Shown here in pieces: positions 23,780 to 45,296 of a stretch of DNA of 64,000 nt (within the stretch, counting starts at the first letter, position 1; every line of letters starts with the position of its first letter). Below the pieces are notes generated by a model, which saw only the letters and a program-made list of their open reading frames with translations, searched no databases and was not told the DNA's origin. Location: the IMG/VR virus record IMGVR_UViG_3300030673_000004, positions 310,001-374,000 of that record; one strand, 5' to 3'. The position numbers and the translations under genes were made by a program.

Positions 23780-26367
23780 ACGTCCGAAGCATGTCTCGTG
23801 ATGTTGTAGCTGACGGTACAACACGCATGTATGGTAACATTGATAAACTGGCAGAGCTCGCAGCGCTATCCAGTTATGGTATCATAGGTGATCTTAGTAC
23901 AAAACTAAAAGTTACAGTATCTCAGGCTGCCACGTGTATGCAAATAACTGCAGGCAGCTTTCTAACCCCATCAGGTGTCATCGGAGCATTCACAGATATT
24001 ACAACAGGTGTATTTCCACACTCCTTTGAACCGGGAACATCAGGTGTAATACTTGCCACATTTGATGTAGCTGAAAAAACAAGTATAAATGAGTACGGAC
24101 AATCTGTTATAGAGAACACCAGCATAACATCAACTTATGCGTGCTTATCTATTGATCAGTATGGCGAAAACTACGTTGAGTGGTATCCTAAATCAGTAGT
24201 TCTTGCTGTCTATAACATTATTGATGGTGCTATTGAATTAGACGAAAGTAATACTGTTGTCGCTAACACACGACGAGCATCAGGTTCTTTTGATAATAAG
24301 CACATAAACTTAGGATACCCGCAGTATGCAACAGAGAGAAATGTGCATGGATTACAATTTGATGATCTCTATACAGGCAGCACATCTTTCTTGAAGCAAG
24401 CATTCAAGGAGGGTTTTCTTATTGGTGGTGCATCTAGTAGCCAAGGTACACCTGGAGACACAACGGAAGTAGAAATAAACGAGGATGCATGGCAAATTGA
24501 TTATCTAGGTAGATTAACAGGTACACCGGGCATCTATTACGTATATCTACCCTCAACACCAACATCAGTAGCTAACATTGTAGATGCTGTCTACACGAGT
24601 TCTCCTGTAGCTGTAAACTGGTTAGACAAACAGAACGTTCTAACATCCAGCATACCTGTGCATGTGTACGTGAGTTATACAGCGCTTAGCGACTTTGATT
24701 TAGCAACACCCAACCCAACAAGTGCGCTAAAGCTACGAAATAACCCAAATAAGATTATCGTATCGGATGGAAAGATAATCCATACCAAAGCAAGTAACAC
24801 AGTACGCTTAGGTTTTGATTCTTACGCAGATTTGGTCCTTGATAAGATATCAACATATGTATCTACCAGTGGATCACTCGTAGCAGCCCCAACAGTAGTA
24901 GAGACAGCAACAGTAAATACAACGCTGACCGGCACATCACTGACAAGCAAGGTAACCTTCCCAACACCCAGCCAAGTATCCTTCGCCGTGCGGGGACAAG
25001 GTCTACAATCAGTGCAGGAACCGCCCCAAGGTGTCTTAAAAGTAACTAACTCACGCTTCATTGGAACAAACAATCTAACATTTACTGTTTCTAATGATGA
25101 AGAGACTGTAGCGCTATCAGCTACCGTAGGAACTACAGTGGTTCTGACAGCCACAGAACCCCTACATCCGTGTGGCTATCTAACAAAAGACGGAGTACTT
25201 GTAACAAGCTCCAGTTGGTATCGTATTGATGATTATACAGTAGCGTTGAACCCTAATGCACACACCACCGACTCTAAATACCTATGGATCTTAGCTGCAG
25301 GAGAATCACCTCGCTACTTAGGAAGAAGCATTCAAGCAGTTGGTACAGGATCTGCCCCAGATACAGTAAAAGCTACTGGTTATATTCAAATAACAACTAT
25401 TCCTCTAAGTGGTGATGCGATCACCATAACTACAACGGATTACACAGCAACGTTCACCTATGGTGCTAACTGGGCTATAGATACAACGCTACAGAGAGTA
25501 GCATCTTCATTAGTCACGGCAATTAACCGCTCTGACGTATATGCGGATGTAACATCAACAATACTAAACGATCCTGCTGGTGTGTACTTAAAAGTTACAA
25601 GCAGATCAAGTTCTGCTGATTGCAACAATTGGACCATTGAGAGTAATGCCACAGCACCGTTTACCGTTAAGTCTTTTTATGCTGGTGGCACTTATGCACC
25701 ATACAGTAGCGACCTTCTAAACATGACGGTCTCTGTACTGTACCAGCAAACACCTTATGTAAAAAAACCTAAGATCAATATCTATGCAACTAAATCCATT
25801 GCAGCAGATACGACATCAGATGAGAGTAAAATTTATCATTTAATGTATACGTTTGATGCCAGCGATAAGAAAACAGAATGGCGTAGTCATACACTCATTC
25901 GCAGTGATTTGATCATGGCTGACTATAATGATAGAACTAGCTATGATACAACAACTATGTTCTCTTTAGGATTAACCGTGACTGGGTATGATGCAGCCGG
26001 TGCCTCTCTAAATGAAACTCTCTCCTTTGATGAAGTGGATGCCTGGAGTCCTACGACGGGGTATTCAGATCTAGCGTTCAAGTCAACAGCTAACATCTAC
26101 TCGTCTCTGTCATCTTGGATTGTGTCAACCACGCCACCGTCATCGGTAAGTGCAACACTGAGTGTACTATCCAATCTCTATGACGAACCTTTTGACATGT
26201 TCCCTGTCAGAACGTTCAAGTTAGAAGGTGGTAAAGCTTGGAACTTCAAAGATACACGTAGAATTCTTATGGGCAATGCTATTGCAGGAGAAGCATCGCA
26301 GCAAGAACAACTGCATCAAGCATTATCCATGCAAAATGATGTCCTCACGGTAAGTGGTCTATTATGA
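23776..26367 (+). CDS. Virion structural protein, paralog of 45347..47584
   Basis: Several collinear blocks are shared with 45347..47584: NVHGLQFDDL/NPHGQSLADL, GTPG/GIPG, TGYDAAGASLNETLSF/YGTDTNGAAIKETLEF, DTRRIL/DSRRIL. Confidence 0.65.
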   Translation: MNVRSMSRDVVADGTTRMYGNIDKLAELAALSSYGIIGDLSTKLKVTVSQAATCMQITAGSFLTPSGVIGAFTDITTGVFPHSFEPGTSGVILATFDVAEKTSINEYGQSVIENTSITSTYACLSIDQYGENYVEWYPKSVVLAVYNIIDGAIELDESNTVVANTRRASGSFDNKHINLGYPQYATERNVHGLQFDDLYTGSTSFLKQAFKEGFLIGGASSSQGTPGDTTEVEINEDAWQIDYLGRLTGTPGIYYVYLPSTPTSVANIVDAVYTSSPVAVNWLDKQNVLTSSIPVHVYVSYTALSDFDLATPNPTSALKLRNNPNKIIVSDGKIIHTKASNTVRLGFDSYADLVLDKISTYVSTSGSLVAAPTVVETATVNTTLTGTSLTSKVTFPTPSQVSFAVRGQGLQSVQEPPQGVLKVTNSRFIGTNNLTFTVSNDEETVALSATVGTTVVLTATEPLHPCGYLTKDGVLVTSSSWYRIDDYTVALNPNAHTTDSKYLWILAAGESPRYLGRSIQAVGTGSAPDTVKATGYIQITTIPLSGDAITITTTDYTATFTYGANWAIDTTLQRVASSLVTAINRSDVYADVTSTILNDPAGVYLKVTSRSSSADCNNWTIESNATAPFTVKSFYAGGTYAPYSSDLLNMTVSVLYQQTPYVKKPKINIYATKSIAADTTSDESKIYHLMYTFDASDKKTEWRSHTLIRSDLIMADYNDRTSYDTTTMFSLGLTVTGYDAAGASLNETLSFDEVDAWSPTTGYSDLAFKSTANIYSSLSSWIVSTTPPSSVSATLSVLSNLYDEPFDMFPVRTFKLEGGKAWNFKDTRRILMGNAIAGEASQQEQLHQALSMQNDVLTVSGLL

Positions 26368-27218
26368 AACGTATATTCAGCGAATCTTTAATTAGCCCGC
26401 GATGGGTGGATTCATCCACAGTAAACTATCGTTTCCCTGTAGTATCATCTGGAAATGAAACTCTACCAACAAGAGCACGGAAAGATGGGTACAGATCAAA
26501 ACCGATTAGAATCACAAATAGCAGCAGCATTGAGATCATAGGAACATATCGAGATGCATCCAATAAATCAGGATGCTTAGCTATATATACATGGCTGAAC
26601 CCAACAGTAATAGCAGCTAAAACACACAACGAATCAACTGTGCAGCTAGAAACTGTTGGTAATATGTATTTTGGTGAGTTCCTTGCAGGGGCCGCTGTAA
26701 TAAATGGAACATCATTCAAATCTAGCTACACTTTTGATGAGACTGTAGAGTTTATTCAAATTTATACGACTATGGATCTAACAGCAATCACCATCAGTGA
26801 GAGTGACATATCAGGTGCTGCTGTATCCCTCGTAGCACCGACAGCAACTACAGATGATGTCACAATTGAAGATGACTTTGAACTGGCTGAAGTAACTATA
26901 CCTGTGTTGATTGAAGACCCCTTCAGTCTAGGACCCGATGCTGATCCCTTCCTTACTATAGCGCCACTTCCAGGAACATATGCAGAGCCGGTACTTGTAC
27001 AACTATCTGTTACAACACCGTCTACGGTGTATTACACAACAGATGGTACAACACCAACAACAAGTTCTTTGGTATATACAGCACCGTTCTACGTGTTCTC
27101 CAATATCACAATTACAGCCTTAGGTGTTCCTGCAGACAGAACAGCTTCAGAAATTGCTACTGCTGTATATACTGTAATTTATACACCCGCTATCAGTCCA
27201 GCTAGTGGTGTACGCTGA
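26364..27218 (+). CDS. Virion protein with one CHB_HEX_C_1 repeat; probably the N-terminal part of a frameshifted gene
   Basis: Contains PLPGTY...VYYTTDGTTPTTSS..Y. Ends mid-repeat (TPAISPASGV-R-stop), and the repeat continues in the +1 frame. Confidence 0.65.
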   Translation: MKRIFSESLISPRWVDSSTVNYRFPVVSSGNETLPTRARKDGYRSKPIRITNSSSIEIIGTYRDASNKSGCLAIYTWLNPTVIAAKTHNESTVQLETVGNMYFGEFLAGAAVINGTSFKSSYTFDETVEFIQIYTTMDLTAITISESDISGAAVSLVAPTATTDDVTIEDDFELAEVTIPVLIEDPFSLGPDADPFLTIAPLPGTYAEPVLVQLSVTTPSTVYYTTDGTTPTTSSLVYTAPFYVFSNITITALGVPADRTASEIATAVYTVIYTPAISPASGVR

Positions 27219-29448
27219 TTCTGTTGCTGTAACAATTGCATCTAATACAAACCTAAGAGCACAACGAGTACATACAGAAAGTTTACTCGGAGCAAGCAAC
27301 AAAACTATCCACTACACTACGGATACACGACCACCAACAACTGAGTCCTCTATATATACTGGATCATTAACTGTAACAGCTAATACAGTAGTACAAGCAA
27401 TTACATCTATTGATGGAATTACATCAGCGGCGGCTTCCGCTAATTACATTGTCGTAAGCACACCAACCATTAATCCGACAAGTGGTTCTTATGCGAACCC
27501 TCTATCTGTAACGCTGGCTTGTGAAAACGTACTTGCGGACATTCATTATACCCTCGATGGCACTACGCCAACTATAACATCGTCTATATACACTACACCC
27601 ATTGTTTTAACAGCATCTGCTCAAGTAAAATGCTTTGCAGCTATTGATGGTGTAACGTCATCTGCTGTTTCTGCAGATTATAGTCTACCACCTGTAATAT
27701 CACCTAATGCCGGTATTTATGAGTTCACACAGGCAATAACAATCACGGCGTCAACAGGTGCTACTATCTATTATACCATTGATGGCACTACGCCAACTAC
27801 AGGATCTGCAGTTTACTCATCAAGTATAACATTAGACCATTCAGCTCATGTTAAAGCTATATCGGTTAAAAATGGAACACCATCTACTGTAGCCCAGCAG
27901 CAATATGAAATTGTGTACCCAACACCGACAGAAACGTTAAGCTCCTTGTACTACGACGCTACAGCGCATCAATATGTATGGAAGAATAAATCTGTCGCGA
28001 AACCAACATTCTCCCTCGCGGAAGGGGCGTATAACACTACCCAAACTGTGAGTATTAGTGCAGCATCTGCCGCTACTGTATACTACACGCGGGATGGAAG
28101 CACACCAACAGAAGCATCAACAAAATACACAACACCACTTACGCTGTCGGCACCTACAAAATTAAGCGCTATAGCTATTAATGGTACTGCAACCTCGGCA
28201 ATAAACACAGCAACCTATGTAATCAATCTAAGCCCCTTAATTTCGGCAATGCACCCAAACGAAATACACGAAGGTGCAGCATACAGTAATGTTATTATAT
28301 CTGGATCAAATCTCTCACAGTTATCAAGCGTTACGCTTAATGGAGTTAGCTGTCCTGTAATAGCAGCAGCTAACGACTTTTCAAATATAACGATAAACAT
28401 ACCGGGAAATTCCGTATTGGCGTCGAACAATAATACATTACCAATATCAATCCGTGTGGTTAATGGCACAAATTCTAGTGAAACCGTTGTAGGTCAGGTT
28501 ATACCTAAATGGCTCCAGGGTAGAGCTAGAATGATCGGTGTCGATTACAGTTTGATTGGAGACCCCTCTTTTGGCATACACGCTAATGGCACGGGAAAGT
28601 CATCTAAAATTAGCATATCACCAACAGGCGGAATTTATACCAAAACACCCTATAAATGGTGGTACGTACCAGCCGTGTCTTTAGGTGGATGGGATTCAAA
28701 TATGGCAAACATCTGGTATTGTGGTACGGATGATTTGGATAGTGAATTTATAAACCCCGCCGCACGCTTAACAGATAACGCAACTAACTCAAATACAAAT
28801 GTTAAAAGTATGTGCTTTGATAGTAATTCTAATTTCTACTGGAGCCTTCCTGATGGTCTATACAAAGGAACACCGTCAAGCGCATCAACATTTACTTGGA
28901 TCAAGTTACTAGATAACATAGTGTTTGACTCACTGTGTTCTGCATCAACAGATAACCTATACGGCATCCAACTAAGTTCCGACTACAGCTATAGCATCGT
29001 CTACAGTATAAACCCAAATCTAAGAACGGCTAATAAATTAGTCACCCTGCCAACAACTAACTGTATTGGCTATAAACTCGGATGTAATCCAGTAACAAAT
29101 TATCTCTACGCAATACCAAACAATTGCAATGAACCACTTTCCATACTGATCAGCAAAGACAATGGCACTACTTGGATAAATTCTGGATCAGGCAGTGTTG
29201 GCCTGTTCACTCTCTTAAAAGAAGGACCTGCTTTTGGAGATAATTCATTATTCTTTGTATCGGGTACCTGCACATACAGAGCCAATCTAAATTTAGATGG
29301 ATCTATATCTGGCATACTAAAGATATCTTCAAATATGCTGGGCAATGAAACTGGAATTGCATATAAGTTCAATAAAAAACCAACCCTGTATATTACAACA
29401 GAAGATGAAGCATCCAGTAATATTCATACCCTAATTAGACAGTTCTAA
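27205..29448 (+). CDS. Fibre/adhesin-like protein: four CHB_HEX_C_1 repeats, an IPT/TIG-like domain and a C-terminal beta-propeller-like region
   Basis: (H/Y)YT.DG..PT motifs x4 and the IPT-like PLISAMHPNE...VIISGSNL. The GTG start lacks an obvious SD. Confidence 0.65.
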   Translation: MVYADSVAVTIASNTNLRAQRVHTESLLGASNKTIHYTTDTRPPTTESSIYTGSLTVTANTVVQAITSIDGITSAAASANYIVVSTPTINPTSGSYANPLSVTLACENVLADIHYTLDGTTPTITSSIYTTPIVLTASAQVKCFAAIDGVTSSAVSADYSLPPVISPNAGIYEFTQAITITASTGATIYYTIDGTTPTTGSAVYSSSITLDHSAHVKAISVKNGTPSTVAQQQYEIVYPTPTETLSSLYYDATAHQYVWKNKSVAKPTFSLAEGAYNTTQTVSISAASAATVYYTRDGSTPTEASTKYTTPLTLSAPTKLSAIAINGTATSAINTATYVINLSPLISAMHPNEIHEGAAYSNVIISGSNLSQLSSVTLNGVSCPVIAAANDFSNITINIPGNSVLASNNNTLPISIRVVNGTNSSETVVGQVIPKWLQGRARMIGVDYSLIGDPSFGIHANGTGKSSKISISPTGGIYTKTPYKWWYVPAVSLGGWDSNMANIWYCGTDDLDSEFINPAARLTDNATNSNTNVKSMCFDSNSNFYWSLPDGLYKGTPSSASTFTWIKLLDNIVFDSLCSASTDNLYGIQLSSDYSYSIVYSINPNLRTANKLVTLPTTNCIGYKLGCNPVTNYLYAIPNNCNEPLSILISKDNGTTWINSGSGSVGLFTLLKEGPAFGDNSLFFVSGTCTYRANLNLDGSISGILKISSNMLGNETGIAYKFNKKPTLYITTEDEASSNIHTLIRQF

Positions 29449-29458
29449 AGGTGACACA

Positions 29459-32068
29459 ATGGCATTAACTAATGAAGTCCAATATCCTGAACCATCTGCC
29501 TCTGGTTTTCTTTTCGCAAATAAAGCATCAGATGGAACCATAACCTATACATGGCAGACAGGCGGAGCATCCGATAAACCGGAAACGCCAACATTCTCTG
29601 TTGCAGCAGGAACATATGCACAAGGTCAAAATGTAACAATAACATCCGCCACAACCGATGCTGTTATCTATTACACGATAGATGGCTCAATACCATCAAC
29701 AACAGCTACCCAGTACACAGACCCGGTAAGCATTAAAAACTCCTGCACACTATCAGCAGTCGCAGTAGTGAGTGGTTATACGTATAGCACAGTAGCAACA
29801 GTAGCGTACTCTATTGTTCGTCGCATTGTCACAACAGCCCAAGACAGTTCAACATACATAGCGGTTGCATTAACGAGTGATGACTCTGGTAGTACGTGGT
29901 CCGGCTTAGCCCTTCATAACTCAAATACAGCCTCACGTATTGCATCATTATATGGAACAACAGTACTATCTAGCAATTACTTATTTGCTATCAGTACAGA
30001 CAGATGCACTACGTTTAACACAATACCAGCTTCAACAAACAACACATACTGGCCACCAACGTCTATTAAAGATGTCCATGCGGTAAATGGCATATTCCTA
30101 GGATATGTTGGATATATAAACAGCAATGGGTCATATTATGCATGTGTTGCAGTATCACACTCAGGTAATTACTTTAAGTTCCTAAGCATTCCTGTACCAA
30201 GCCAACCTAGCTATAGCTACGGAAGCAGCGCACATATAGCAAATGCAGCTTTTTACAATGGAATATATCTTATCTGGCTAGGTAACTATATGCTGAAAAG
30301 TACAGATAACTGTGCAAGTTTTACAGTTTTATCTAATATGCCATTTGCACAAGGAACAGATCTAAAGAGTACAGCATATGGATTTATTTTAGGTGCCTCC
30401 TCTGCTGTATATACGTCAACAGATGGAGAAACTTGGAGTCAAGCAACTATAACTACGTATAGTAATTACAATTACATTGTATGCACTCTCTCTACTAACG
30501 TAATTCTAATATATAGCAGTTCTAACACACAAGTTAGTTACGATGGTGGTCATACATTTAACAAATGTTTTAATGTTTCTGGAAATGAAATTTTAGACTA
30601 TGCGCAATCCGACGTAAGAACTGCAGAGGTTGGCTACCTTCAAAACAATGTCACAGTACAACAAAGACAACTTATGCAGCCATCAACAGCTACACCTGTT
30701 ACTCAATCACAAAATACAGGAAATAGGGTAACATGGAACGGAGATAAGTTTATAATAAAAGCAGGAGCCGAACTAGAACGAATAGGAAATGATCCAAGCA
30801 CCTCCGAAACACTAACTACTCTCAGTACTTATGGCTCAACTCATGGACTCTCAATAAGCTCAGACTCCTCTATCGCGCTAGGAACGGTTAGTGATACTGA
30901 AACAAACCTGATTCAAGACACACAACAAACAGTGCCAACACCCACAGTAACAAAACTAGCCTATACCCAAACATACTTAACGGATTCCGGAAATGACGCT
31001 TTTACTACTAGCTTTGACACATTAAACTGCGGTTGTTATAATCCAGCAACAGGGCTTCTCTATGTAGCCCCAAGTTCAGGAAACATCAAAACAATAAACA
31101 CCGCAACGGGTGTTTATTCTAATCTAACAACAGGTGGTTATAAAACCTACACAGGTCTTCTCTACTGTAGCACAGATGGCTTTTTATATGGTGGTATAAA
31201 CGGTGGTTATATCTACAAAATAGATTCCACAACAGGCGTAGAAACAGCGCTAACATCCGTATCTAGGTATTGGGCATATCTAACATACAACCAAACTAAT
31301 AGCTTACTCTATGGAGTTTGCAGAACTTCATCAAGTAGCTATGGCAATACATCACTATATAGCATATCCCTAACAGGCACAGAAACATTAATAACAGCAG
31401 CATCTTCTTACCAATCAATACAAGGAATAAGCTACGATAGTAATAATGTGCTTATAATGAACTATGATGGTTCAGTATTGCGCGTATCAACAAGTGATAT
31501 AATAACTACAGTTAATACATGCATAGATCATGGTACGCATTATGCAGCAACAAAACCTATAGTATTTAATTCTCAGTATATTGGAATAGCATCAAATACG
31601 CTTATAGGTATGGCTGCCGATGGTACTGTCATATATCTGCCAAACCCGACTAACACAACGCGATCCTATAAACTTCTCATTGTAGCAGGATCCAGCCTAT
31701 ATGCAATTGTTAATGAGTACATATCTGGAACAACCTACCCAAACAGACTACGCTTACTGGCAGTAAGCACAACAAGTACCAATTATGTTGATGCAACAGT
31801 AACGGGAGATAACAACCTATTCCCTATACTGTTCGGAACCACTGACGGTTCAGATCCAACACCATCAAGTCAGGTGCTAGCAGCAAACGGAAGCTTAACT
31901 ATCCAAAATGCTACAGGAACATTGCAAAATTTTACATACAGTTATGGTACCTATGGTGGGGATCTAAGCAATATAACAGTAGCAAAGTTGCTAGCAGGAA
32001 ATACACTAAAAGTATTTGCATACATACCTAATTATACTATTAGCACAATTGTAACTACACAACTATAG
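29459..32068 (+). CDS. Fibre/adhesin-like protein with CHB_HEX_C_1 repeats and BNR/beta-propeller domains
   Basis: YYTIDGSIPS, Asp-box-like S.D.G.TW motifs, and repeated LYG blades. Confidence 0.65.
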   Translation: MALTNEVQYPEPSASGFLFANKASDGTITYTWQTGGASDKPETPTFSVAAGTYAQGQNVTITSATTDAVIYYTIDGSIPSTTATQYTDPVSIKNSCTLSAVAVVSGYTYSTVATVAYSIVRRIVTTAQDSSTYIAVALTSDDSGSTWSGLALHNSNTASRIASLYGTTVLSSNYLFAISTDRCTTFNTIPASTNNTYWPPTSIKDVHAVNGIFLGYVGYINSNGSYYACVAVSHSGNYFKFLSIPVPSQPSYSYGSSAHIANAAFYNGIYLIWLGNYMLKSTDNCASFTVLSNMPFAQGTDLKSTAYGFILGASSAVYTSTDGETWSQATITTYSNYNYIVCTLSTNVILIYSSSNTQVSYDGGHTFNKCFNVSGNEILDYAQSDVRTAEVGYLQNNVTVQQRQLMQPSTATPVTQSQNTGNRVTWNGDKFIIKAGAELERIGNDPSTSETLTTLSTYGSTHGLSISSDSSIALGTVSDTETNLIQDTQQTVPTPTVTKLAYTQTYLTDSGNDAFTTSFDTLNCGCYNPATGLLYVAPSSGNIKTINTATGVYSNLTTGGYKTYTGLLYCSTDGFLYGGINGGYIYKIDSTTGVETALTSVSRYWAYLTYNQTNSLLYGVCRTSSSSYGNTSLYSISLTGTETLITAASSYQSIQGISYDSNNVLIMNYDGSVLRVSTSDIITTVNTCIDHGTHYAATKPIVFNSQYIGIASNTLIGMAADGTVIYLPNPTNTTRSYKLLIVAGSSLYAIVNEYISGTTYPNRLRLLAVSTTSTNYVDATVTGDNNLFPILFGTTDGSDPTPSSQVLAANGSLTIQNATGTLQNFTYSYGTYGGDLSNITVAKLLAGNTLKVFAYIPNYTISTIVTTQL

Positions 32069-32076
32069 GAGACATC

Positions 32077-32361
32077 ATGAACACATCAATCTTCGCAGAC
32101 TTAGAGATAGGTACTAAGATATGGAACTCGGCATGGCCTGCAACAACATACTTAGTAATCACGGAACTGAACAACAAAGCAGAAGCTAGAGCATTACAAC
32201 AAGATGGTAATCACCCACCGTACTTAAAGGAACCAACAGTACGTAAAATCATATTACACCAAGAGTTTGGTGAAACCACCCAAGAAGAGAATTGGATAAC
32301 AAATCAGACCGCGCTGTTAGATCAAAACTGGACACTCACGGAACCAAAAGCAGACGCATAA
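32077..32361 (+). CDS. DUF2829 / Tad2-like small protein
   Basis: C-terminal WITNQTALLDQNW fits the family motif W.xSQTD.LA.DW. N-terminal L..G.KI...W fits LK.GKKV.R.GW. Confidence 0.5.
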   Translation: MNTSIFADLEIGTKIWNSAWPATTYLVITELNNKAEARALQQDGNHPPYLKEPTVRKIILHQEFGETTQEENWITNQTALLDQNWTLTEPKADA

Positions 32362-32379
32362 AAGTCTTTGACATACAGA

Positions 32380-32418
32380 AGAAACAGCAGACCAACTAAC
32401 AGTCTGCTGTTTCTATTT
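32380..32418 (+). terminator. Intrinsic terminator
   Basis: Perfect 13-bp stem agaaacagcagac / gtctgctgtttct with a 9-nt loop, then attt. Confidence 0.75.
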
Positions 32419-32457
32419 AGTACCATCCTATGCAAGAACCTTTTATTAGAGGTCGGT

Positions 32458-33138
32458 ATGATAAAGCGTGCGGACAGTGAAAATATAGTCACAGACGGTC
32501 TGAGTAATGCTCAAACCTTCTGGACAGGTATTTCTACTGTACCTACCGTTCGTAATTCATACAATGAAGATATGTACACAGGTACGTTTGATGTCATTGA
32601 CACAGTAAACGACCCTATGTTTGATGGTTACTGTTTCCTACAAATGATGCAGGCAGAGAGCTTACAAGGATCGTCTAACTATCACTACCTGTCCTTGAGA
32701 GAGACCGGCTACCAGTTACCTATATTTAGAGCAGAAGATTCTAAAGTCTACATGCCTATATCGGTAGTCTTTGGCTGGAATGGTGATACTGACTCCTACA
32801 TTACGCTAGACACCTTTGACTCTAGTACGCCAAACAGCTTATACATAAAAACGATCTTTACTGATATGAAAGCATCTGTCTTCATAAATGGTGTGGAAAA
32901 GATTAGTCCTGATGTATCAGCGTGCTTTTCAAGTGTGGATAACACAAGAAAACTCTTGTATAGGATACTAACACAAAATGTAACAGGCTATTCTAGTGGA
33001 AGTTCCTTAATACAAGGAACTATTCAAGTATCACTAACAGACACAACAACTCAAAAAATCTATGTGCTACATCAAGGGTCTTATACAGTAGATCCTTCTC
33101 GTACCTATCAAGTTGAAACACGAATATCACACAGTTAA
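32458..33138 (+). CDS. Virion protein, paralog of 38973..39659
   Basis: Start moved to ATG 32458 (SD AGAGGT), because the TTG at 32368 precedes a terminator. FWTGIST and YL.LRETGY.LP.F are shared with 38973..39659. Confidence 0.7.
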   Translation: MIKRADSENIVTDGLSNAQTFWTGISTVPTVRNSYNEDMYTGTFDVIDTVNDPMFDGYCFLQMMQAESLQGSSNYHYLSLRETGYQLPIFRAEDSKVYMPISVVFGWNGDTDSYITLDTFDSSTPNSLYIKTIFTDMKASVFINGVEKISPDVSACFSSVDNTRKLLYRILTQNVTGYSSGSSLIQGTIQVSLTDTTTQKIYVLHQGSYTVDPSRTYQVETRISHS

Positions 33139-33149
33139 AAGGAATCCGC

Positions 33150-38700: not shown

Positions 38701-38960
38701 ACACACTAGATGGTACCGACCCCAGTGTGACATCATCTATATATCTAGGTGTTCTTACTATAAGTCAAACGACTACAATAAAAGCTTATGTCACATCCCC
38801 AGGCTATAATGATAGTACGATAGCCATAGTCACCTATACAATAAACATACCAGTACCAGTACCAGAAGGACATGTTGTCCCTGTATACAGCAACCTATAT
38901 GTATACGACTTCAAAATGGGATTACGTGAAGTATGTGCTTTCTTGACAGCGTCAACCTGA
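35709..38960 (+). CDS. Fibre/adhesin-like protein: six CHB_HEX_C_1 repeats and a 7-blade BNR propeller
   Basis: YT.DGT.P x6, seven ~41-aa blades W..S..G.DGSLYF....G.IYKS.D.G.TW, and a C-terminal YDFKMGLR motif. Confidence 0.7.
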   Translation: MSNPLVAIAPKFGPLSLQLSKHYLAASVTNASFVGYLPDGPKVSVSGGGGVMPLGPSFGPAVSDNSILQLQPQVNLTNTHNRSGTLTFKIPGPATGVPTVTVQNKAQAVTIKQATANTAPLSLRKSTKYSYTWNTANTTHDVDTTVTASTNTQGSLPVSYRIYGGTNSASTVTWVTASQNVYINDTQPIIFTLADVDKDPITYYLYDNLGLIKTDTVSSNQTISVPYTNATIGTHSFSLKLIDDAQAETDSTGPTLNVFPQADAPTASEPSGTYLGSATVTLASDQSGSIYYTLDGTTPTSASALYSTAIVITTSCTLNAVSIVPNYKVSPVLTVTYNIKTSTPVIQTASGTYTSAQSVSITCDTNNSTIIYTEDGTDPAINTNPQIAATTTSQLWRTGCVSSNDILYAAVYGGYIYKSLNRGLNWIQLSAPQLNWSTSCIGADGSLYFGAYGNYIYKSTDNGTTWAPVVSEGTRSWNTSCAGTDGSLYFGIDNGYLHVSNDNGNTWTSKTSLGMKTWATCCVASNGTIYFAASNESVYASLDKGTTWTPNAILGTQQWTTSCVGLDHALYLGASNGSIYKSTDQGTSWAALSAAGTANWVASTVGTDGSLYFAASGTANIKKSTDAGATWTDIVIASQGTWDFLLTGTDGSIYASDASTEAGGYIYKIPAGTWEVANGYIYSAPVTVTRTETLKAISTVSGQVASDVASTSYQLKASIPTFDPIAGNYTRYITVTLASSLSGSTTYYTLDGTDPTTESPVYNTGIRLTQPTTIKALTAYATWENSDIATAVYNVTTPQVPTFSVPAGTYNTAQTVALACSTTGASIYYTLDGTDPSPDATESPTSILYTTSIAVDVSKTIKALATTEGDARSDIVTATYELKAVSPVFSAATGTFTDNFVTSIATTTSNAKIYYTIDGTTPTIDSYLYSSPLDIFSTITLKAIAIFAGWTSSDVTTVTYTFIPKTSVAPTFSLPTGTYTEAIAVSLASPTPNKIIRYTLDGTDPSVTSSIYLGVLTISQTTTIKAYVTSPGYNDSTIAIVTYTINIPVPVPEGHVVPVYSNLYVYDFKMGLREVCAFLTAST

Positions 38961-38972
38961 TAAAAATCAAAT

Positions 38973-39659
38973 ATGAGCAATACACTAACAGCAAATGAAG
39001 TAGTTGTAACGGCAGGTTTAGAAACTGCTAAACCCTTCTGGACAGGCATATCTACAATACCAGATACAACTACTACCAGTGGAGATCATCTGTATATTGG
39101 TACATTTGCTGTAGTTGATAATACATCATCTGTATCCTATGATGGCTTTTGTCAACTCACTATGACACAACGTACTGAATTAGCGGGTATCTCATGCCCG
39201 CAGTACTTAGCACTACGCGAAACCGGATATGCCTTACCGCTATTCAAAGCATCAAATGCTGATGTATATGAACCGATATCTATTGTTTTTGATTGGACAG
39301 GGGACATTGATTCACAAGCTGAATTCTTAATATACAGTAAAAAGAATCCAGCAACTAGATATATAAAATTAGTATTCACAGGAACAAGCGCTGACATAAT
39401 AATAAACGGTGTAACACAAACAACACCAAGTATAGCATCATTCTTTACAGATGATAGAATTATCCGCAAAGTAACCTTAGCTATTTTGACACAAAATACA
39501 GCTAAGAATACAGTAACAACAGCATCAAACGTAGCTGGGCGTATACAAATTTTACTAACAGACTATCAAACAGGCATCAATCGCATTCTATGGGATAATA
39601 TAACAACAGTAGACCCATCAGAACTATACCAGTTTGAAGCACGTCTAATACATAGCTAA
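38973..39659 (+). CDS. Virion protein, paralog of 32458..33138
   Basis: Collinear similarity with 32458..33138 over its whole length. Confidence 0.7.
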   Translation: MSNTLTANEVVVTAGLETAKPFWTGISTIPDTTTTSGDHLYIGTFAVVDNTSSVSYDGFCQLTMTQRTELAGISCPQYLALRETGYALPLFKASNADVYEPISIVFDWTGDIDSQAEFLIYSKKNPATRYIKLVFTGTSADIIINGVTQTTPSIASFFTDDRIIRKVTLAILTQNTAKNTVTTASNVAGRIQILLTDYQTGINRILWDNITTVDPSELYQFEARLIHS

Positions 39660-39670
39660 AAGAGATACAA

Positions 39671-42600
39671 ATGACTTTGATCAACAACTGGACAAACTCA
39701 ACAGGAACGTTATCACCAACAACGGCTGCCTACGTTTCGGCTATTGGACAAGACAATTATATTCTGACGACAGGCACACAAGGAGACTCCCCCTATTACT
39801 CCAATGATGGCGGAAGTACATGGACAGCAGCAACTGTTAATGATACTTGGGCGGGCAAGACTACTATGTGTCTAGCTACGGTTTCAAGCGATAGTCGCAT
39901 ATACCTAATAAACCAAGCGATTCCCAAACTTTATGTGTCTGTTGACCATGGTGCTACTTATTCTGTAGCCTCATCGGGAAACCAGTATACATGTCTAACA
40001 TGTGTGGGATCAACACTGTTTGCTACTTTAGAAACAGGTACTACACTATATAAAAGTACTGATCATGGTGTAACTTTTACTGCTATAGCAACACCTGATA
40101 CTACGGCCACAGCCATCTTCGTAGCAGCTAACTCTACTTGTTTGTTTTTATGCAGTACCGACACAAATACACATTTAATCAATATGTACAGAAGTCAAGA
40201 TTCGGGAACCTCTTGGACTCAGATTCTGACAAATTATACCATAGGTTTTATAGGCGAACTGTTTCACACAACAAATAGCACATACCTAAGCATTTATGAT
40301 GTCCCATCAAATTCTATTTTATTGCTAAAATCTGACGATAATTTCAGCACCAGCACACCTATAACGGCACTATCGGCAATAATGCCCGCTCCCATAGTTT
40401 TGGGAGGTGCTGACAGCTCTAATGACATCTATGTCGTTAGTTTCTATACGTCTGGTGTGCTTGCTACTAGCAATGATAGCGGGACTTCGTTTGTGAATGA
40501 AGCCCCTGATAGTAACGGGCAAGTAACGCTTGCAATAGGCGATACAAGTATTGTTGCCATTACAAACTCACCTTCGTCGGGTATTACTGCGGTATACAGT
40601 GGAATGCTTCCTGGGGGCATAGTTAAACCCAATAAGCCTACGATTAGTCCAGCAACAATAACAAATGCAAGTCCACTCACAGTAACACTAGAAACAGCTA
40701 CAACAGGCGCAGCACTATACTACACCCTAGACGGAACAGATCCAACAGAATCTTCTACACTGTATACGTCTCCGTTTACACTAACCTACGCTGTACCCAC
40801 AATATGCACAGTGAAAGCTATCGCAGTAGCTAACTCCATATCAAGTACAGTAGCCACACAGGTATACCATATCGGCAACCAGGTAAGCGCACCTGTCATC
40901 ACAGGTACCCTAAATACCTATGGTGCCAACATGACAATCACCATCACAGATACTACGGATGGTGCTCTTATCTACTATACGGATGATGGAACTACCCCAA
41001 CAACAACATCTGCAGCATATACAGAGCCATTTTTAACGTTTGAATCCTCTATTGATATTAAAGCAATCGCAGTCAAATCGGGATACTTTGATAGTAGTAT
41101 TGCAGAGTCACTAATTAATACAGGAATCGCAGTCTCCACGTATCCCACACTGGGACCCTATCTTAATACGTACAATTGCAACCCTGTTGCTTCTGCTACT
41201 AGAAAATTTACAATAGGTACTACAGCACACATTGAAATGCTAAGTACTACAGATGGTGTACATGACCAAGCACCCATCTATTACACACTTGACGGATCCA
41301 CACCAACAATAGCAAGTACACAATATGCAGCTCCGCTAAGTATTACAGAATCCTGTGTAGTCAAAGCGGTTTCTATTAAAGGTGTGAAGACACCCACAAT
41401 TGGACCTGTTGCAACTATCACGTACACGTTTACGGCTGGAGTACTTGCAAAACCAACAGCCTACACATTAGGTGCTGAATATGTAGATCTTACAACAGGT
41501 ACGCATACAACAACTACAAGTGATCCTGGTTATGTGTTAACGGCTGTATTTATCCCCGACTACAATAACGGGATAGGAGCTTTAGCTACAGCAGAAGGAA
41601 CTCTAGGAAATGTTACCCCAAGCTACATTTACTTGTGTGATCCAATTACGTATGAACCCTTCAAGAGACTCACACAACTCGATAACGGCGATAATATCCG
41701 AGCCTTGGCTTACTCAACAGACACAGGCACATTATATGCAGCTACAGAAAACAAAAACCTCTACAGTATTGATCTTAACACAGAAACGATAACAACACTT
41801 AGTGTACTATTACCAAACCCAATATACTATTATTTAATATATAACAACGTAGATCAGTGCTTGTATGGATACTGCTCGGGGTCCATCAATTCACTTGTAA
41901 AATACAATACAGTAACAAGCACGCTTTCGACAATAACTTCTAATGCACTTTACCATGTTGATTTTTGTGATCCTATAACAGGAACTCTTTATGGGCACTC
42001 AGGCACAGGTAACAATCCTGGTCTTTTTACCATAGACCCAAACACAGGAGTAGCTACAGAAGTAATCACAACTACAACATCCTATGATAAGGTACTTCAT
42101 GATAACATAAGTGGTAATACATATGCGCTTACATACCCGGGCAACGCTGCAGTTACTGCATACACATTAGACTTAGCAGCACGAACTGAAACATTAAAAT
42201 TTACAGCAGCACTTACGCAGGGAGTCCAGGACACGACTATTGCCAGTACAGCTACAGTACCAGCACCCCTATTCTCTGTTGCGGGCGGATCATACAACAT
42301 AGCACAAACCGTAGCAATAACAAATAGACTTACAGGGATAAATATCTATTATACGCTTGATGGAACAGCACCAACAGCTAACTCTACATTATACACAGAA
42401 CCTCTACTCGTAGAGTATCCTCTAACGCTAAAAGCAATTGCAACTAAATCCGGATTTGCACAAAGTTATGCCACAGTAGCAACATACAATATAAGCTATA
42501 CAAAAGTACCTAAACCTATATTATCTGTAGCATCTGGAAGCTTTACAAACGACCAAACTGTAACATTATCAGATACAAAAGAAGGTGTAACATTCTACTA

Positions 42601-43723
42601 CACAATAGATGGAACAACACCAACAACAACATCTTTGCTCTACACAGGTCCAATCACTATTTCAGGAAATACAACACTTCAAGCTATTGGTATATTTGAA
42701 GGTTTAACAAACAGTGACATAGTATCTGCTACATACACATTCTCATGCATAACACCTACAGCATCCATCCCGGCAGGAACATGGGGTGCTACAAAAATAA
42801 TTACGCTTTCTTCTGAAACAAATAATACAAAAATCTACTACACCACAGATGGTACAGCACCAACCCAAAATTCTGCTATTTATAGTACGCCAATACATTT
42901 AGTAACGACAGCAACATTAGCGTTCGTAGCAACAAAACATGGATATGCTTCCACGTCAGTAGTCACAAACGTGTATACAATCATTCGAGGGGACCTATAC
43001 TATGGAAGCTATAATGTAAAAGTTGTCAATACAACAAATAATGTTTCTGCTAAGCTAAACTCGTTCTATGACGGCAACATGTGTGCCGTAGCTGCTGACG
43101 GTCAGTCTCTTTATGCCTTAGGCACAGCGGGCCTAACAACAATAAACCCTCACACAGGAGAGTACACAACAGTTGCACTTTCAATAACAGATACTATTGA
43201 GGGTGATTCATTCGTATCAGCAACATATTACGATAATGCAATATATGCATGCGTATCCAGTGGTGGTTCAGATAGTGGCGTTTATAAAATAGACCCAAAA
43301 ACATACAGTGTGACATTAGTACGTAAACACAATTATGTACAAGGCATAACTGTATATAATGAAAAGATCTATTTTTGCACTCCCTATGAAGCTATAAAGT
43401 ATATGAATCTTGATGGGTCCAATGAGACAGTACTGAACTCATCCACATCATATATGTGGGGAAGCCTAATCGTCTTTAATGACTATTTATATGCAGGAAG
43501 TTATGAATATACTAATACGTCATTAACAAAAGTACCTGGCGGGATTTACAAAATAGATCTAACAACAGGAAGCATCGTTAGTATAATAAATCAAGAGCTA
43601 GATCGCTACTGGGTAGGTCTTGCTGCCGGTACGGATCAGCTCTATGCTAGAGATAGCTTAACAGGCATATATAGAGTTAATGTACACAACAATACAGTAA
43701 CTCAGATTGTGAGTGAATTCTAA
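39671..43723 (+). CDS. Fibre/adhesin-like protein: N-terminal BNR propeller, six CHB_HEX_C_1 repeats and two further propeller-like regions
   Basis: Asp-boxes (S.D.G.TW/TY/TF) and YYT.DG..PT x6. Confidence 0.7.
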   Translation: MTLINNWTNSTGTLSPTTAAYVSAIGQDNYILTTGTQGDSPYYSNDGGSTWTAATVNDTWAGKTTMCLATVSSDSRIYLINQAIPKLYVSVDHGATYSVASSGNQYTCLTCVGSTLFATLETGTTLYKSTDHGVTFTAIATPDTTATAIFVAANSTCLFLCSTDTNTHLINMYRSQDSGTSWTQILTNYTIGFIGELFHTTNSTYLSIYDVPSNSILLLKSDDNFSTSTPITALSAIMPAPIVLGGADSSNDIYVVSFYTSGVLATSNDSGTSFVNEAPDSNGQVTLAIGDTSIVAITNSPSSGITAVYSGMLPGGIVKPNKPTISPATITNASPLTVTLETATTGAALYYTLDGTDPTESSTLYTSPFTLTYAVPTICTVKAIAVANSISSTVATQVYHIGNQVSAPVITGTLNTYGANMTITITDTTDGALIYYTDDGTTPTTTSAAYTEPFLTFESSIDIKAIAVKSGYFDSSIAESLINTGIAVSTYPTLGPYLNTYNCNPVASATRKFTIGTTAHIEMLSTTDGVHDQAPIYYTLDGSTPTIASTQYAAPLSITESCVVKAVSIKGVKTPTIGPVATITYTFTAGVLAKPTAYTLGAEYVDLTTGTHTTTTSDPGYVLTAVFIPDYNNGIGALATAEGTLGNVTPSYIYLCDPITYEPFKRLTQLDNGDNIRALAYSTDTGTLYAATENKNLYSIDLNTETITTLSVLLPNPIYYYLIYNNVDQCLYGYCSGSINSLVKYNTVTSTLSTITSNALYHVDFCDPITGTLYGHSGTGNNPGLFTIDPNTGVATEVITTTTSYDKVLHDNISGNTYALTYPGNAAVTAYTLDLAARTETLKFTAALTQGVQDTTIASTATVPAPLFSVAGGSYNIAQTVAITNRLTGINIYYTLDGTAPTANSTLYTEPLLVEYPLTLKAIATKSGFAQSYATVATYNISYTKVPKPILSVASGSFTNDQTVTLSDTKEGVTFYYTIDGTTPTTTSLLYTGPITISGNTTLQAIGIFEGLTNSDIVSATYTFSCITPTASIPAGTWGATKIITLSSETNNTKIYYTTDGTAPTQNSAIYSTPIHLVTTATLAFVATKHGYASTSVVTNVYTIIRGDLYYGSYNVKVVNTTNNVSAKLNSFYDGNMCAVAADGQSLYALGTAGLTTINPHTGEYTTVALSITDTIEGDSFVSATYYDNAIYACVSSGGSDSGVYKIDPKTYSVTLVRKHNYVQGITVYNEKIYFCTPYEAIKYMNLDGSNETVLNSSTSYMWGSLIVFNDYLYAGSYEYTNTSLTKVPGGIYKIDLTTGSIVSIINQELDRYWVGLAAGTDQLYARDSLTGIYRVNVHNNTVTQIVSEF

Positions 43724-44586
43724 TGAGTGCTGCTAATCTAACGTATTACGTATTCCTAGTAAGTTCTCCCGTAATAACACCAGCATCCGGTTACTATAGT
43801 GCAAACCAAAACATGCAAGTAACAATAACCAACCAAACAGATGGCGCTGTAGTTTTTTACACAACAGATGGAAGTGATCCTACAACAGCATCACAGGCAT
43901 ACTCAGGACAATTTAATATAACAGCACCAGCTACAATAAAGGCTATTGCGGTTGGAACCACTACAAGCAGTATTGTTGAAGAAAACTTTAGTGTTCATGA
44001 GCGAGCACAACCCCCTACAATACTACCAGCACCAGGAACATACCAAGGCTCCATTACAGCTACAATTACAACGACCACAGTTGGTGCTTCTATATATTAC
44101 TCAACTAATGGAACTAACCCAACAGCCACGTCTGGGATACTTTACTCCGGCCCCATTACAGTAAGTAAAACAGAAAAGATTAAAGCTATTGCCGTCTCAT
44201 CAAATTATGACAATAGTAATATCACAGCCGCATCATACACAATAACTGAGTTACCAATAGCACCAGCACCATCTATAACACCAAAAACAGGACAATATAC
44301 AACATCAACAGTTGTTACTCTCCAAACAGCACTAGCTTCTGGGGTTATCTATTACACAGTAGATGGAACTATCCCGACAGTTCATTCTACACATTATACA
44401 AATCCAATTACAGTGACTGAAGATACTACAATAAACGCTATTGTTATTGCAGATAACTATAAAAACAGTGCTATAACATCATCAGTGTATAGCCTTGTAG
44501 CCCCGCAACAAAGCTATCTAAACATATATGACTTCAAAATGGGATTACGAAAAGTAGACTCTTTTGCAACGGACAAAGACATATGA
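43723..44586 (+). CDS. Three CHB_HEX_C_1 repeats plus a C-terminal YDFKMGLR motif
   Basis: FYTTDGSDP, YYSTNGTNP and YYTVDGTIP. The C-terminal motif is shared with 35709..38960. Confidence 0.7.
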   Translation: MSAANLTYYVFLVSSPVITPASGYYSANQNMQVTITNQTDGAVVFYTTDGSDPTTASQAYSGQFNITAPATIKAIAVGTTTSSIVEENFSVHERAQPPTILPAPGTYQGSITATITTTTVGASIYYSTNGTNPTATSGILYSGPITVSKTEKIKAIAVSSNYDNSNITAASYTITELPIAPAPSITPKTGQYTTSTVVTLQTALASGVIYYTVDGTIPTVHSTHYTNPITVTEDTTINAIVIADNYKNSAITSSVYSLVAPQQSYLNIYDFKMGLRKVDSFATDKDI

Positions 44587-45104: not shown

Positions 45105-45144
45105 ATAAAAAGAGGACCCAGGGCATGCACACCCGAGGTCCTCT
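45103..45144 (-). terminator. Intrinsic terminator on the minus strand (ends the small RNA)
   Basis: Minus strand reads AGAGGACC-ucGGG-loop-CCCu-gGGUCCUCU-UUUUAUUU. The U-tract exists only on the minus strand. Confidence 0.75.
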
Positions 45145-45261
45145 CCCGGTAGTCAAAAGCTCTTCAGGAGCTTAGTGTCACCTCAACTAACTGTTGAGCT
45201 GATGACTACAGGCTACGTTTCGAGCCGAAGCCCGTAAGGATGTCTCTGAAGAACCGTCCTC
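45105..45261 (-). ncRNA. Novel structured small RNA (~157 nt)
   Basis: Bounded by a near-consensus promoter and a terminator, with no ORF. Three-way junction: closing stem 45149-55/45203-09, hairpins 45157-73 and 45182-98. Additional hairpin 45211-26 and a 7-bp long-range pairing 45161-67/45246-52. Confidence 0.75.
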
Positions 45262-45267
45262 AATCAA

Positions 45268-45296
45268 AATATAACATACTACCTAGTGATTGTCAA
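45268..45296 (-). promoter_or_regulatory. Sigma70 promoter TTGACA-N17-TATATT with extended -10 TG
   Basis: Minus strand reads TTGACA atcactaggtagtatgt TATATT. Predicted start is the G at ~45261. Confidence 0.8.

What the first reader, a model, noticed from the sequence alone, without database searches (positions are those of the whole stretch)
26364..44586. Array of about 22 CHB_HEX_C_1 (Fn3-associated) repeats with swappable beta-propellers
Seen: YT.DG..P repeats number 1, 4, 2, 6, 6 and 3 in six genes, interleaved with BNR/Asp-box and other propellers and an IPT-like domain. Established: I know this Ig-like repeat mainly from bacterial surface and secreted proteins, and phage Ig-like domains mediate glycan or mucus adherence. 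Inference: an unusually elaborate set of flexible virion appendages, with propeller heads as receptor or glycan binders, possibly glycosylated by the GT2.
Basis: partly seen in the sequence, partly recalled or inferred. Interest (0 to 1): 0.6.

Follow-up and report, generated by a model that had tools for sequence, protein, structure and literature searches.

The report
Jumbo phage's modular adhesin gene cluster
A 375-kb phage from peat spends 18 kb on six proteins built from 21 copies of one Ig-like domain plus lectin-type beta-propeller heads, most likely flexible virion arms that grip host surface sugars; this is an unusually elaborate case of a known phage strategy, not a new kind of system.

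Summary
Pfam finds CHB_HEX_C_1/Fn3_assoc domains 1, 4, 1, 6, 6 and 3 times in six co-directional genes (window 26364-44586). That is 21 domains, plus one degenerate candidate in the third gene. All copies in the 375.5-kb genome lie in this stretch.

Between the domains sit BNR/Sortilin-type propellers (two), a DUF4394 domain, an IPT/TIG plus NHL/SGL-like propeller seen only by structure search, and weaker propeller-like regions.

Three things are new:
- One Ig-like domain is split by a seven-blade propeller. The same nested cassette occurs in an unrelated siphovirus-like contig, in the gene directly after the tape-measure gene.
- Relatives keep the gene order but change the architecture. The g9 counterpart is 549 aa instead of 1350 aa, and g7 counterparts are 370, 719, 1085 and 1432 aa.
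- g5, which lies inside the cluster, belongs to a family annotated as phage structural or tail protein.

Virion display as adhesins is therefore the best reading (about 0.6), but it rests on indirect evidence. No sheath, tube or fibre family was recognised, and there is no proteomic evidence. The phage comes from peat, so mucus adherence does not apply. Glycosylation by the GT2 is untested. I rate it a new variant of a known kind, of moderate interest.

The parts
26364..27218 (+). g1, 284 aa: unassigned N-terminal region (aa 1-197) plus one CHB_HEX_C_1 domain (nt 26955-27170).
27205..29448 (+). g2, 747 aa: four CHB domains (nt 27229-27444, 27463-27678, 27691-27903, 28003-28218), then an IPT/TIG-like domain and an NHL/SGL-like six-blade propeller (aa 339-747).
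   Evidence: The propeller and IPT are seen only by the Atlas structure search; Pfam finds nothing there.
29459..32068 (+). g3, 869 aa: one CHB domain (nt 29588-29809), about 670 aa of propeller-like sequence with two or three Asp-box-like motifs, and a degenerate CHB-like C-terminal end.
32077..32361 (+). g3b, 94 aa, unassigned. It is conserved in the relative L005 (89% identity).
32458..33138 (+). g4, 226 aa from the likely true start (the ORF opens at 32368). It is a paralogue of g8 (42% identity).
33150..34670 (+). g5, 506 aa: member of a phage structural/tail protein family (PHROG 687).
   Evidence: The direct match has E 5.6e-6. There are 285 homologues. Of 60 scanned, 29 match 'structural protein', 16 'tail protein' and 6 'tail spike'.
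34670..35716 (+). g6, 348 aa, unassigned. Its stop overlaps the g7 start. It is conserved together with g5 and the g7 N-domain even in the distant relative L007 (65% identity).
35709..38960 (+). g7, 1083 aa: conserved N-domain (aa 1-264), one CHB, one split CHB with a nested propeller, four more CHB domains, and a conserved C-terminal peptide.
36738..37847 (+). Nested cassette in g7. The CHB N-half is at 36738-36854 and the C-half at 37734-37847. Between them, at 36855-37733, lies a seven-blade BNR propeller with a 41-aa period and six Asp boxes.
   Evidence: The two halves match profile positions 2-36 and 37-66 and 1-39 and 37-74. The AF2 propeller core has pLDDT about 90. The homologous cassette is in P0001.
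38973..39659 (+). g8, 228 aa, paralogue of g4. Its low-confidence model resembles the ConA-like lectin/glucanase sandwich.
   Evidence: pLDDT 54; Z 8.0-8.6, borderline
39671..43723 (+). g9, 1350 aa: BNR propeller (aa 1-322), three CHB, a DUF4394 domain (aa 579-865), three CHB, and a C-terminal domain (aa 1103-1350).
40667..43030 (+). Internal cassette of g9 (aa 333-1120: CHBx3, DUF4394, CHBx3). It is absent from the 549-aa counterpart in the relative L005.
43723..44586 (+). g10, 287 aa: three CHB domains (nt 43768-43983, 44014-44238, 44269-44490) plus the same C-terminal peptide as g7 (shared core YDFKMGLR.V..F).
   Evidence: The peptide occurs only twice in the genome.
5579..6970 (+). Context: Baseplate_J-like gene on the same strand, 20 kb upstream.
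   Evidence: E 3.3e-14
13603..15780 (+).

Best explanation
The cluster is the variable host-adhesion module of a peat jumbo phage. Six proteins are assembled like beads on a string from a non-catalytic Ig-like spacer (CHB_HEX_C_1) and lectin-type heads: BNR, DUF4394 and NHL/SGL-like propellers, and possibly the ConA-like g4 and g8. They lack secretion signals, so they would be made in the cytoplasm. I infer that they are mounted on the virion together with the conserved partners g5, g6 and the g7 N-domain. There they would act as flexible arms that bind surface polysaccharides of the host. Specificity would change by gain, loss and nesting of whole domain cassettes rather than by a mutagenic retroelement. 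Shown here: the domains, their number, the nesting, the cassette differences between relatives, and the structural-protein family of g5. Inferred: virion location, glycan binding and a role in host range.
For: There are 21 CHB domains, confined to this locus. BNR/Sortilin and DUF4394 score above their Pfam cut-offs. The AF2 model of the g7 insert is a confident propeller (pLDDT about 90 over residues 50-330). It resembles Ycf48, Photorhabdus propeller lectins and glycan-sensor propellers, and many phage proteins, including tail-fibre and chaperone-domain proteins. It has no FRIP motif and only 3 Arg, so a sialidase active site is unlikely. The same split-CHB::propeller cassette aligns over its full length at 32% identity, with the same insertion point, to P0001. 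P0001 is encoded directly after the tape-measure gene and before a hub-like gene in a siphovirus-like contig. g5 matches PHROG 687, and its homologues are annotated structural, tail or tail-spike proteins, some fused to sheath, gp15 or BppL_N. Baseplate_J lies upstream on the same strand, and collagen-like proteins carrying GH8 and DUF1565 domains lie further upstream. In the relative L005 the flanking genes are 91-97% identical, while g6, g7, g8 and g10 are 68-78% and the two ends of g9 are 46-53%. The g9 counterpart there lacks the 790-aa cassette. g7 counterparts keep the N-domain but are 370, 719, 1085 and 1432 aa long. None of the proteins has a hydrophobic N-terminus, whereas bacterial homologues often carry T9SS sorting domains. 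No reverse transcriptase was found.
Against: None of the ten ORFs matches a PHROG family at E <= 0.001 in the protein scan. No sheath, tube, gp25 or tail-protein family was recognised in the genome, so the tail type is unknown. Baseplate_J is 20 kb away, with GT2 and ferritin-like genes in between. Strings of Ig domains and propellers are usually monomeric, unlike classical trimeric fibres. The two halves of the split Ig domain were not resolved in the model (pLDDT below 50). The g8 lectin-fold call is borderline. No RNA run holds the locus, and there are no proteomic data.
Confidence: 0.6

Rival explanations
1. Hoc-like decoration. The proteins sit on the capsid or tail tube and make the particle stick to environmental polymers (peat or biofilm matrix) rather than recognise a specific host receptor.
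For: Ig-domain strings are typical of decoration proteins and of the modular adhesins of gut phages (PMC7602432, PMC13370021). g10 (three Ig domains plus a short conserved tail) and g1 are of Hoc-like size. g7 and g10 share a conserved C-terminal peptide that could be a docking site.
Against: The cassette homologue P0001 sits among tail-tip genes. Homologues of g5 are mostly annotated as tail proteins. The fast divergence and cassette turnover between close relatives is what host-range determinants typically show. No capsid gene was identified nearby.
Confidence: 0.2
2. Soluble proteins that are not part of the virion: glycan-degrading or glycan-binding factors made during infection and released at lysis, i.e. 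an 'auxiliary metabolic' reading of CHB_HEX_C_1.
For: CHB_HEX_C_1 is best known from glycoside hydrolases. The closest solved sequence is a beta-hexosaminidase, 6q63. One virome paper listed the domain as an AMG (PMC7300359). SGL/NHL-type propellers can be lactonases. A GH8 domain occurs upstream.
Against: No catalytic domain was found in any of the six proteins. The BNR propellers lack the sialidase motif. The domain is the non-catalytic accessory module of those enzymes. There are no secretion signals. The genes lie in one operon-like block with a structural-family gene.
Confidence: 0.12
3. Chance or annotation artefact: a low-complexity Thr/Ser-rich sequence that mimics a repeat.
For: The proteins are 25-28% Ser+Thr, and the region has a strong negative GC skew.
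Against: Whole-protein E-values go down to 6e-85 and the matches cover the full profile length. The repeats are only 36% identical on average yet align over about 70 columns. Orthologues are conserved in independent assemblies.
Confidence: 0.01

Closest known systems
Carbohydrate-binding modules on siphophage adhesion devices ('evolved' Dit, neck passage structure and tail extensions of lactococcal and Lactobacillus phages; PMC6669499, PMC9128512; PDB 5ly8)
   Same: In both cases glycan-binding modules are inserted into or appended to virion tail proteins as flexible arms. Here the same principle appears as a propeller nested in an Ig-like domain. The cassette homologue P0001 occupies the gene position directly after the tape-measure gene. 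The g8 model's matches include the phage J-1 evolved-Dit CBM2.
   Different: No Dit ring domain (Sipho_tail) or tape-measure adjacency was found in this window. The heads are beta-propellers, not CBM sandwiches. The carrier is CHB_HEX_C_1. The scale is far larger: six genes and 21 spacers.
Tentaclins (PMC10743442) and the modular Ig-like adhesins of gut Bacteroidota phages (PMC13370021)
   Same: Both have the topology of one lectin-type head plus a string of Ig-like domains, proposed or shown to act as phage adhesins with modular combinations.
   Different: Tentaclins carry a C-type lectin head diversified by a DGR. This genome has no reverse transcriptase and no C-lec domain. The gut adhesins use BACON, PKD and Big_2 domains, whereas this cluster uses CHB_HEX_C_1 plus propellers, in a peat phage.
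T4 Hoc and other Ig-like decoration proteins (PMC7602432, PMC9271167)
   Same: Both are tandem Ig-like domains displayed on virions, with weak glycan adherence.
   Different: Hoc is one small protein with a defined capsid-binding domain. This cluster has six proteins of up to 1350 aa with propeller heads, and their location on the virion is unknown.
Multi-fibre jumbo phages (RaK2, PMC3622015; CBB with tail whiskers, PMC5259590)
   Same: These are jumbo genomes with many large appendage genes, and CBB shows atypical whisker-like structures.
   Different: No sequence relation was found. Their fibres carry other domains, and I did not check those genomes for CHB_HEX_C_1.
Bacterial secreted BNR/Ycf48-like and CHB_HEX_C_1 proteins of Bacteroidota and Ignavibacteriota (T9SS cargo)
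   Same: These are the closest sequence relatives of the propeller, at 23-37% identity, and many carry Por_Secre_tail.
   Different: The phage versions lack signal peptides and T9SS sorting domains and are fused into Ig strings.

Membership tests
Pfam CHB_HEX_C_1 (PF13290) / Fn3_assoc (PF13287) | Score above the curated gathering cut-off, with a near full-length profile match. | tested here: met
   Whole-protein scores are 54-280 bits against a cut-off of 22. Twenty-one domains were found, most covering profile positions 1-67.
Pfam BNR / Sortilin-Vps10 / DUF6242 propellers | Score above the gathering cut-off, repeated Asp boxes, and a propeller fold. | tested here: met
   The g7 insert scores 37.0 bits for Sortilin-Vps10 (cut-off 33), 34.8 for BNR (27) and 35.6 for DUF6242 (29). 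The g9 N-terminus scores 40.5 for Sortilin-Vps10. There are six and five Asp boxes respectively. The g7 insert has a 41-aa period and a confident AF2 propeller model.
Sialidase (GH33-type BNR enzymes) | FRIP motif and an arginine triad in the active site. | tested here: not met
   There is no [FYW]R[IVL]P motif in any propeller segment. The g7 insert has only 3 Arg and the g9 N-terminus only 2. BNR_2 scores below its cut-off.
Pfam DUF4394 | Score above the gathering cut-off. | tested here: met
   g9 aa 579-865 scores 35.9 bits against 29.6, but only 48 residues of the 230-position profile are matched. Its fold was not tested, and no significant blade periodicity was seen.
IPT/TIG plus NHL/SGL six-blade propeller (g2 C-terminal part) | Pfam match, or a confident structural match. 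| tested here: inconclusive
   Pfam finds nothing at E <= 5. The ESM Atlas model (whole-protein pLDDT 0.68) gives TM 0.54-0.59 by query and 0.70-0.75 by row to SGL/NHL proteins and IPT/TIG-NHL proteins.
Classical phage tail fibre or tailspike | Homology to known fibre families or attachment domains, and trimeric architecture. | tested here: not met
   The ten ORFs have no PHROG match, and the PDB sequence matches are only to the Ig and propeller parts.
Evolved distal tail protein (Dit with inserted CBM) | A gene directly after the tape-measure gene, a Dit ring domain (Sipho_tail), and an inserted binding module. | tested here: not met
   The window genes have no tape-measure adjacency and no Sipho_tail match. 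The homologue P0001 has the position and the inserted module, but no Dit domain was detected by Pfam or PDB sequence search.
PHROG 687 'structural protein' (g5 only) | A significant profile match. | tested here: met
   The match has E 5.6e-6 over profile positions 183-367 of 469. It was missed at E <= 0.001 in the library-wide scan. Of 60 homologues scanned, 29 match this family with E-values down to 1e-80.
DGR-diversified receptor-binding proteins (tentaclin type) | A reverse transcriptase, a template/variable repeat pair, and a C-type lectin domain. | tested here: not met
   The genome has no RVT_1 match. DNA repeats in the locus are only 60-85% identical and correspond to the CHB motif.
Virion component | Presence in purified particles. 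| not testable with these tools
   The phage is uncultured and known only from metagenomes. No RNA run holds the locus.

The most novel reading that the evidence does not exclude
The split-Ig::propeller unit is a self-contained, portable receptor-binding cassette. A propeller's two ends lie next to each other, so it can be dropped into a loop of any CHB_HEX_C_1 spacer. The same nested unit has been carried between unrelated phage lineages, a jumbo phage and a siphovirus tail-tip gene. In this lineage, host range would then evolve mainly by inserting, deleting and nesting such cassettes in a standing array of Ig spacers. That would be a recombinational alternative to DGR mutagenesis.
Probability: 0.3. 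Interest if true: 0.6.

Novelty: new variant of a known kind. Interest (0 to 1): 0.45.

Why it matters
- **Annotation.** CHB_HEX_C_1 is not on the usual list of phage Ig-like domains. The one virome paper in the library that names it in viruses treated it as a metabolic gene (PMC7300359). Here it is clearly a structural spacer, which matters for annotating viral 'AMGs'.
- **A natural experiment in modular adhesin design.** The locus holds several propeller classes on one scaffold, a domain-in-domain cassette shared with an unrelated phage, and cassette-level differences between close relatives.
- **If virion display is confirmed.** The cluster would give a tractable model of how uncultured jumbo phages of peat and freshwater change host range. 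It would also supply binding modules for glycan-recognition tools.

Tried and rejected
- Megablast of the locus and tblastn of Baseplate_J and g5 against 50,697 GenBank phages found nothing.
- tblastn of g9 matched one fragment.
- tblastn of g10 matched only 12 records, all 'hypothetical protein' or unannotated, and 7 of them Phocaeicola phages.
- Pattern scans of IMG/VR with g7, Baseplate_J and the g7 family alignment found no relatives.
- PHROGs gave nothing for the ten ORFs.
- Pfam and PHROG searches of the genome for sheath, gp25, gp19 and a tail-protein family were negative, and large terminase gave only E 0.04. These genes are probably too divergent, so absence is not shown.
- PDB sequence searches of u1, u4, d2, g8 and the C-terminal part of P0001 gave nothing useful.
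- g5 and g6 are not detectably related to each other.
- The AF2 model of g8 is poor (pLDDT 54). Its BFVD matches are weak and its PDB matches borderline, so the lectin fold is only a lead.
- The split Ig halves were not resolved in the g7 model because only one homologue covers them.
- Blade periodicity was significant only for the g7 insert, and marginal for the g9 N-terminus and the second half of g3.
- A DGR was rejected: there is no reverse transcriptase.
- Recent tandem amplification was rejected: the repeats are at most 52% identical at protein level and 60-85% at DNA level.
No verdict was obtained, and I make no binding claim.
- Laying contigs of four runs on g8-g10 (5,601 letters) showed the source phage, and an identical low-coverage copy in another peat run. 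In freshwater runs g8 was covered but g9 was not covered at 80% likeness or more. This is suggestive only, because holes in contig coverage prove nothing.
Only genetic code 11 was used.

Full report
**What the window is.** The window is bases 310001-374000 of a 375,537-bp IMG/VR virus record with direct terminal repeats, estimated complete. The same genome occurs as a 375,756-bp contig in a JGI metagenome. Public runs that hold it are peat metagenomes, and partial relatives occur in freshwater runs. It has no near relative among 50,697 GenBank phages. Nearly all genes from 886 to 60187 lie on the + strand with short or overlapping junctions.

**The observation.** Ten substantial ORFs fill 26364-44586, plus a 94-aa one (g3b).
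- Pfam finds CHB_HEX_C_1, with the overlapping Fn3_assoc, 1, 4, 1, 6, 6 and 3 times in six of them. I call these g1, g2, g3, g7, g9 and g10. Whole-protein E-values go down to 6e-85.
- A six-frame scan of the whole genome finds 22 matches, all inside window 26964-44481.
- An HMM built from the copies gives the same map.
- The copies are old. They average 36% identity and reach 52% at most, and the best partner of a copy is often in another gene. At DNA level only the motif region is recognisable.
So there are 21 certain domains, not 22.

**The other domains.**
- g7 aa 383-675 and g9 aa 1-322 are homologous to each other and score above cut-off for Sortilin-Vps10 and BNR.
- The g7 segment is seven 41-residue blades in register, six of them with Asp boxes.
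- It matches PQQ-like and designed propellers in the PDB at up to E 4e-18.
- It folds as a confident propeller, with pLDDT about 90 over residues 50-330. The model resembles Ycf48, Photorhabdus propeller lectins and Bacteroides glycan-sensor propellers.
- It lacks the sialidase FRIP motif and has almost no arginines, so I read it as a binding module, not an enzyme.
- g9 aa 579-865 is DUF4394, above cut-off but matched only over a short stretch.
- g2 aa 339-747 looks like IPT/TIG plus an NHL/SGL-type propeller, but only in the ESM Atlas structure search.
- g3 aa 118-790 and g9 aa 1103-1350 are propeller-like on weak evidence.

**A nested domain.** In g7 one CHB domain is split. Profile positions 2-36 lie at 36753-36857 and positions 37-66 at 37746-37835, with the propeller between them.
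- The best database homologue of this 371-aa unit is P0001. It aligns over the whole unit at 32% identity. It has the same split (CHB 9-42, Fn3_assoc 320-356) at the same loop after the DG.xP turn.
- P0001 is encoded on a 28-kb siphovirus-like contig, directly after the tape-measure gene. It is followed by a hub-like gene, a BclA_C-like gene and an endolysin. That is the position where distal tail proteins lie.
- ESM Atlas clusters that combine Sipho_tail or Sipho_Gp37 with DUF6242_C propellers point the same way.
- The AF2 model did not resolve the two Ig halves (pLDDT below 50), because only one homologue covers them. The nesting therefore rests on sequence alone.

**Partner genes.**
- g4 and g8 are paralogues (42% identity), each following a large CHB gene. 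The g8 model is poor and only suggests a ConA-like lectin sandwich.
- g5 has 285 homologues. Of 60 scanned, 29 match PHROG 687 'structural protein', 16 a 'tail protein' family and 6 'tail spike'. Single members are fused to sheath, gp15 or BppL_N domains. g5 itself matches PHROG 687 at E 5.6e-6.
- g7 and g10 end in the same peptide (shared core YDFKMGLR.V..F), found nowhere else in the genome. It is the best-conserved part of g7 among relatives.

**Relatives.**
- A 52-kb ENA contig (L005) is syntenic from the end of g3 to the SNF2 gene. Flanking genes are 91-97% identical. g6, g7, g8 and g10 are 68-78% identical.
- The g9 counterpart in L005 is only 549 aa. It equals our aa 1-332 (53% identity) joined to aa 1121-1350 (46%). 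Our g9 therefore carries an extra CHBx3-DUF4394-CHBx3 cassette, or the relative has lost it.
- Proteins that share the g7 N-domain come in four architectures:
  - 370 aa with no CHB at all (L007, where g5 and g6 are still conserved);
  - 719 aa with a ConA-like head;
  - 1083 and 1085 aa;
  - 1432 aa with both the ConA-like head and the nested propeller.
- In freshwater runs, contigs cover g8 at 95% likeness or more but do not cover g9 at 80%. This is suggestive only.
- The genome has no reverse transcriptase.

**Interpretation.** The combination is what a host-adhesion module looks like:
- non-catalytic spacers and lectin-type heads;
- no secretion signals, while bacterial homologues are often T9SS cargo;
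- a structural-family gene inside the operon;
- Baseplate_J upstream, and collagen-like proteins with GH8 and DUF1565 further upstream;
- cassette turnover against a conserved background;
- a homologous cassette in a tail-tip gene of another phage.

I put virion-displayed adhesins at about 0.6, Hoc-like decoration at about 0.2 and soluble non-virion proteins at about 0.1.

The weak points are real. No fibre, sheath, tube or gp25 family was recognised. The tail type is unknown. There are no expression or proteomic data.

The mucus-adherence analogy does not fit a peat phage. The GT2 idea has a precedent in mycobacteriophage virion glycosylation (Freeman et al. 2023, cited in PMC12619734), but here it rests only on gene proximity and 25-28% Ser+Thr content.

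**Comparison with what is known.** Functionally the cluster resembles three things:
- the CBM-decorated adhesion devices of lactococcal siphophages (PMC6669499);
- tentaclins (PMC10743442);
- the modular Ig-like adhesins of gut Bacteroidota phages (PMC13370021).

It is not a member of any of these families. It has no Dit domain, no C-type lectin or DGR, and different Ig families.

CHB-like repeats were found by tblastn in only 12 GenBank phage records, all 'hypothetical protein' or unannotated. The only paper in the library that names the domain in viruses called it a metabolic gene.

I therefore rate the finding as a new variant of a known kind, with moderate interest. The nested, shared cassette is its most original feature.

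Noticed in passing
L003 (genome 290001-310000, just upstream of the window): 961-3105, 4075-10089, 10089-13013: There are three collagen-triple-helix proteins: 714 aa with DUF1565, 2004 aa (Collagen E 2e-226), and 974 aa with a GH8 glycoside hydrolase domain. They look like a second, different set of fibre-like genes in the same strand block.
   Followed up: partly
L003 3130-4035, 13683-14921, 16277-18105: A patatin-like phospholipase, a methyltransferase with a weak GT2 N-terminus, and two adjacent radical-SAM genes sit between the collagen genes and the window.
   Followed up: no
window 886-5579: A 1014-aa protein with a GGACT (gamma-glutamyl cyclotransferase) domain and a 538-aa Amidoligase_2 protein lie directly before the Baseplate_J gene. 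This enzyme pair is unusual next to a baseplate gene.
   Followed up: no
window 13603-16287: A 725-aa protein with family-2 glycosyltransferase (GT2) domains is followed by a ferritin-like protein, in the middle of the large unassigned + strand genes.
   Followed up: no
window 32368-33138 and 45290-47584: Orthologues in L005 start 30 and 19 codons further in. The true starts are probably 32458 (g4) and 45347 (d2). The hydrophobic N-terminus of the long g4 ORF is then not translated.
   Followed up: yes
window 38904-38927 and 44527-44550: g7 and g10 share a C-terminal peptide (shared core YDFKMGLR.V..F). It occurs only twice in the genome and is the most conserved part of g7 among relatives (88% and 79%). 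Its partner is unknown.
   Followed up: partly
window 49449-55064 and 59135-60187: An 1871-aa SNF2-family helicase and a Toprim primase-like gene follow the cluster. The SNF2 gene is 91% identical in the relative L005.
   Followed up: no
window 26000-46000: GC skew is strongly negative (-0.10 to -0.15) over the cluster, and the proteins are 25-28% Ser+Thr. This probably reflects their Thr-rich composition.
   Followed up: partly
literature (PMC7300359): The only paper in the library that names CHB_HEX_C_1 in viruses lists it as a new auxiliary metabolic gene for sugar metabolism. The present locus suggests such hits may instead be structural Ig-like spacers.
   Followed up: partly
L008 (Phocaeicola phage BV283P2, OP172742.1, 14509-17613): A 1034-aa 'hypothetical protein' downstream of the terminase gene carries CHB-like repeats. 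Seven Phocaeicola vulgatus phages show the same. This is a weak hint that the domain is favoured in phages of Bacteroidota.
   Followed up: partly
whole genome G000: Pfam models for sheath, gp25, gp19 and large terminase find nothing significant in a 375-kb complete phage genome. The best result is Terminase_6N at E 0.04, at 59755-59844. The lineage is very divergent.
   Followed up: partly
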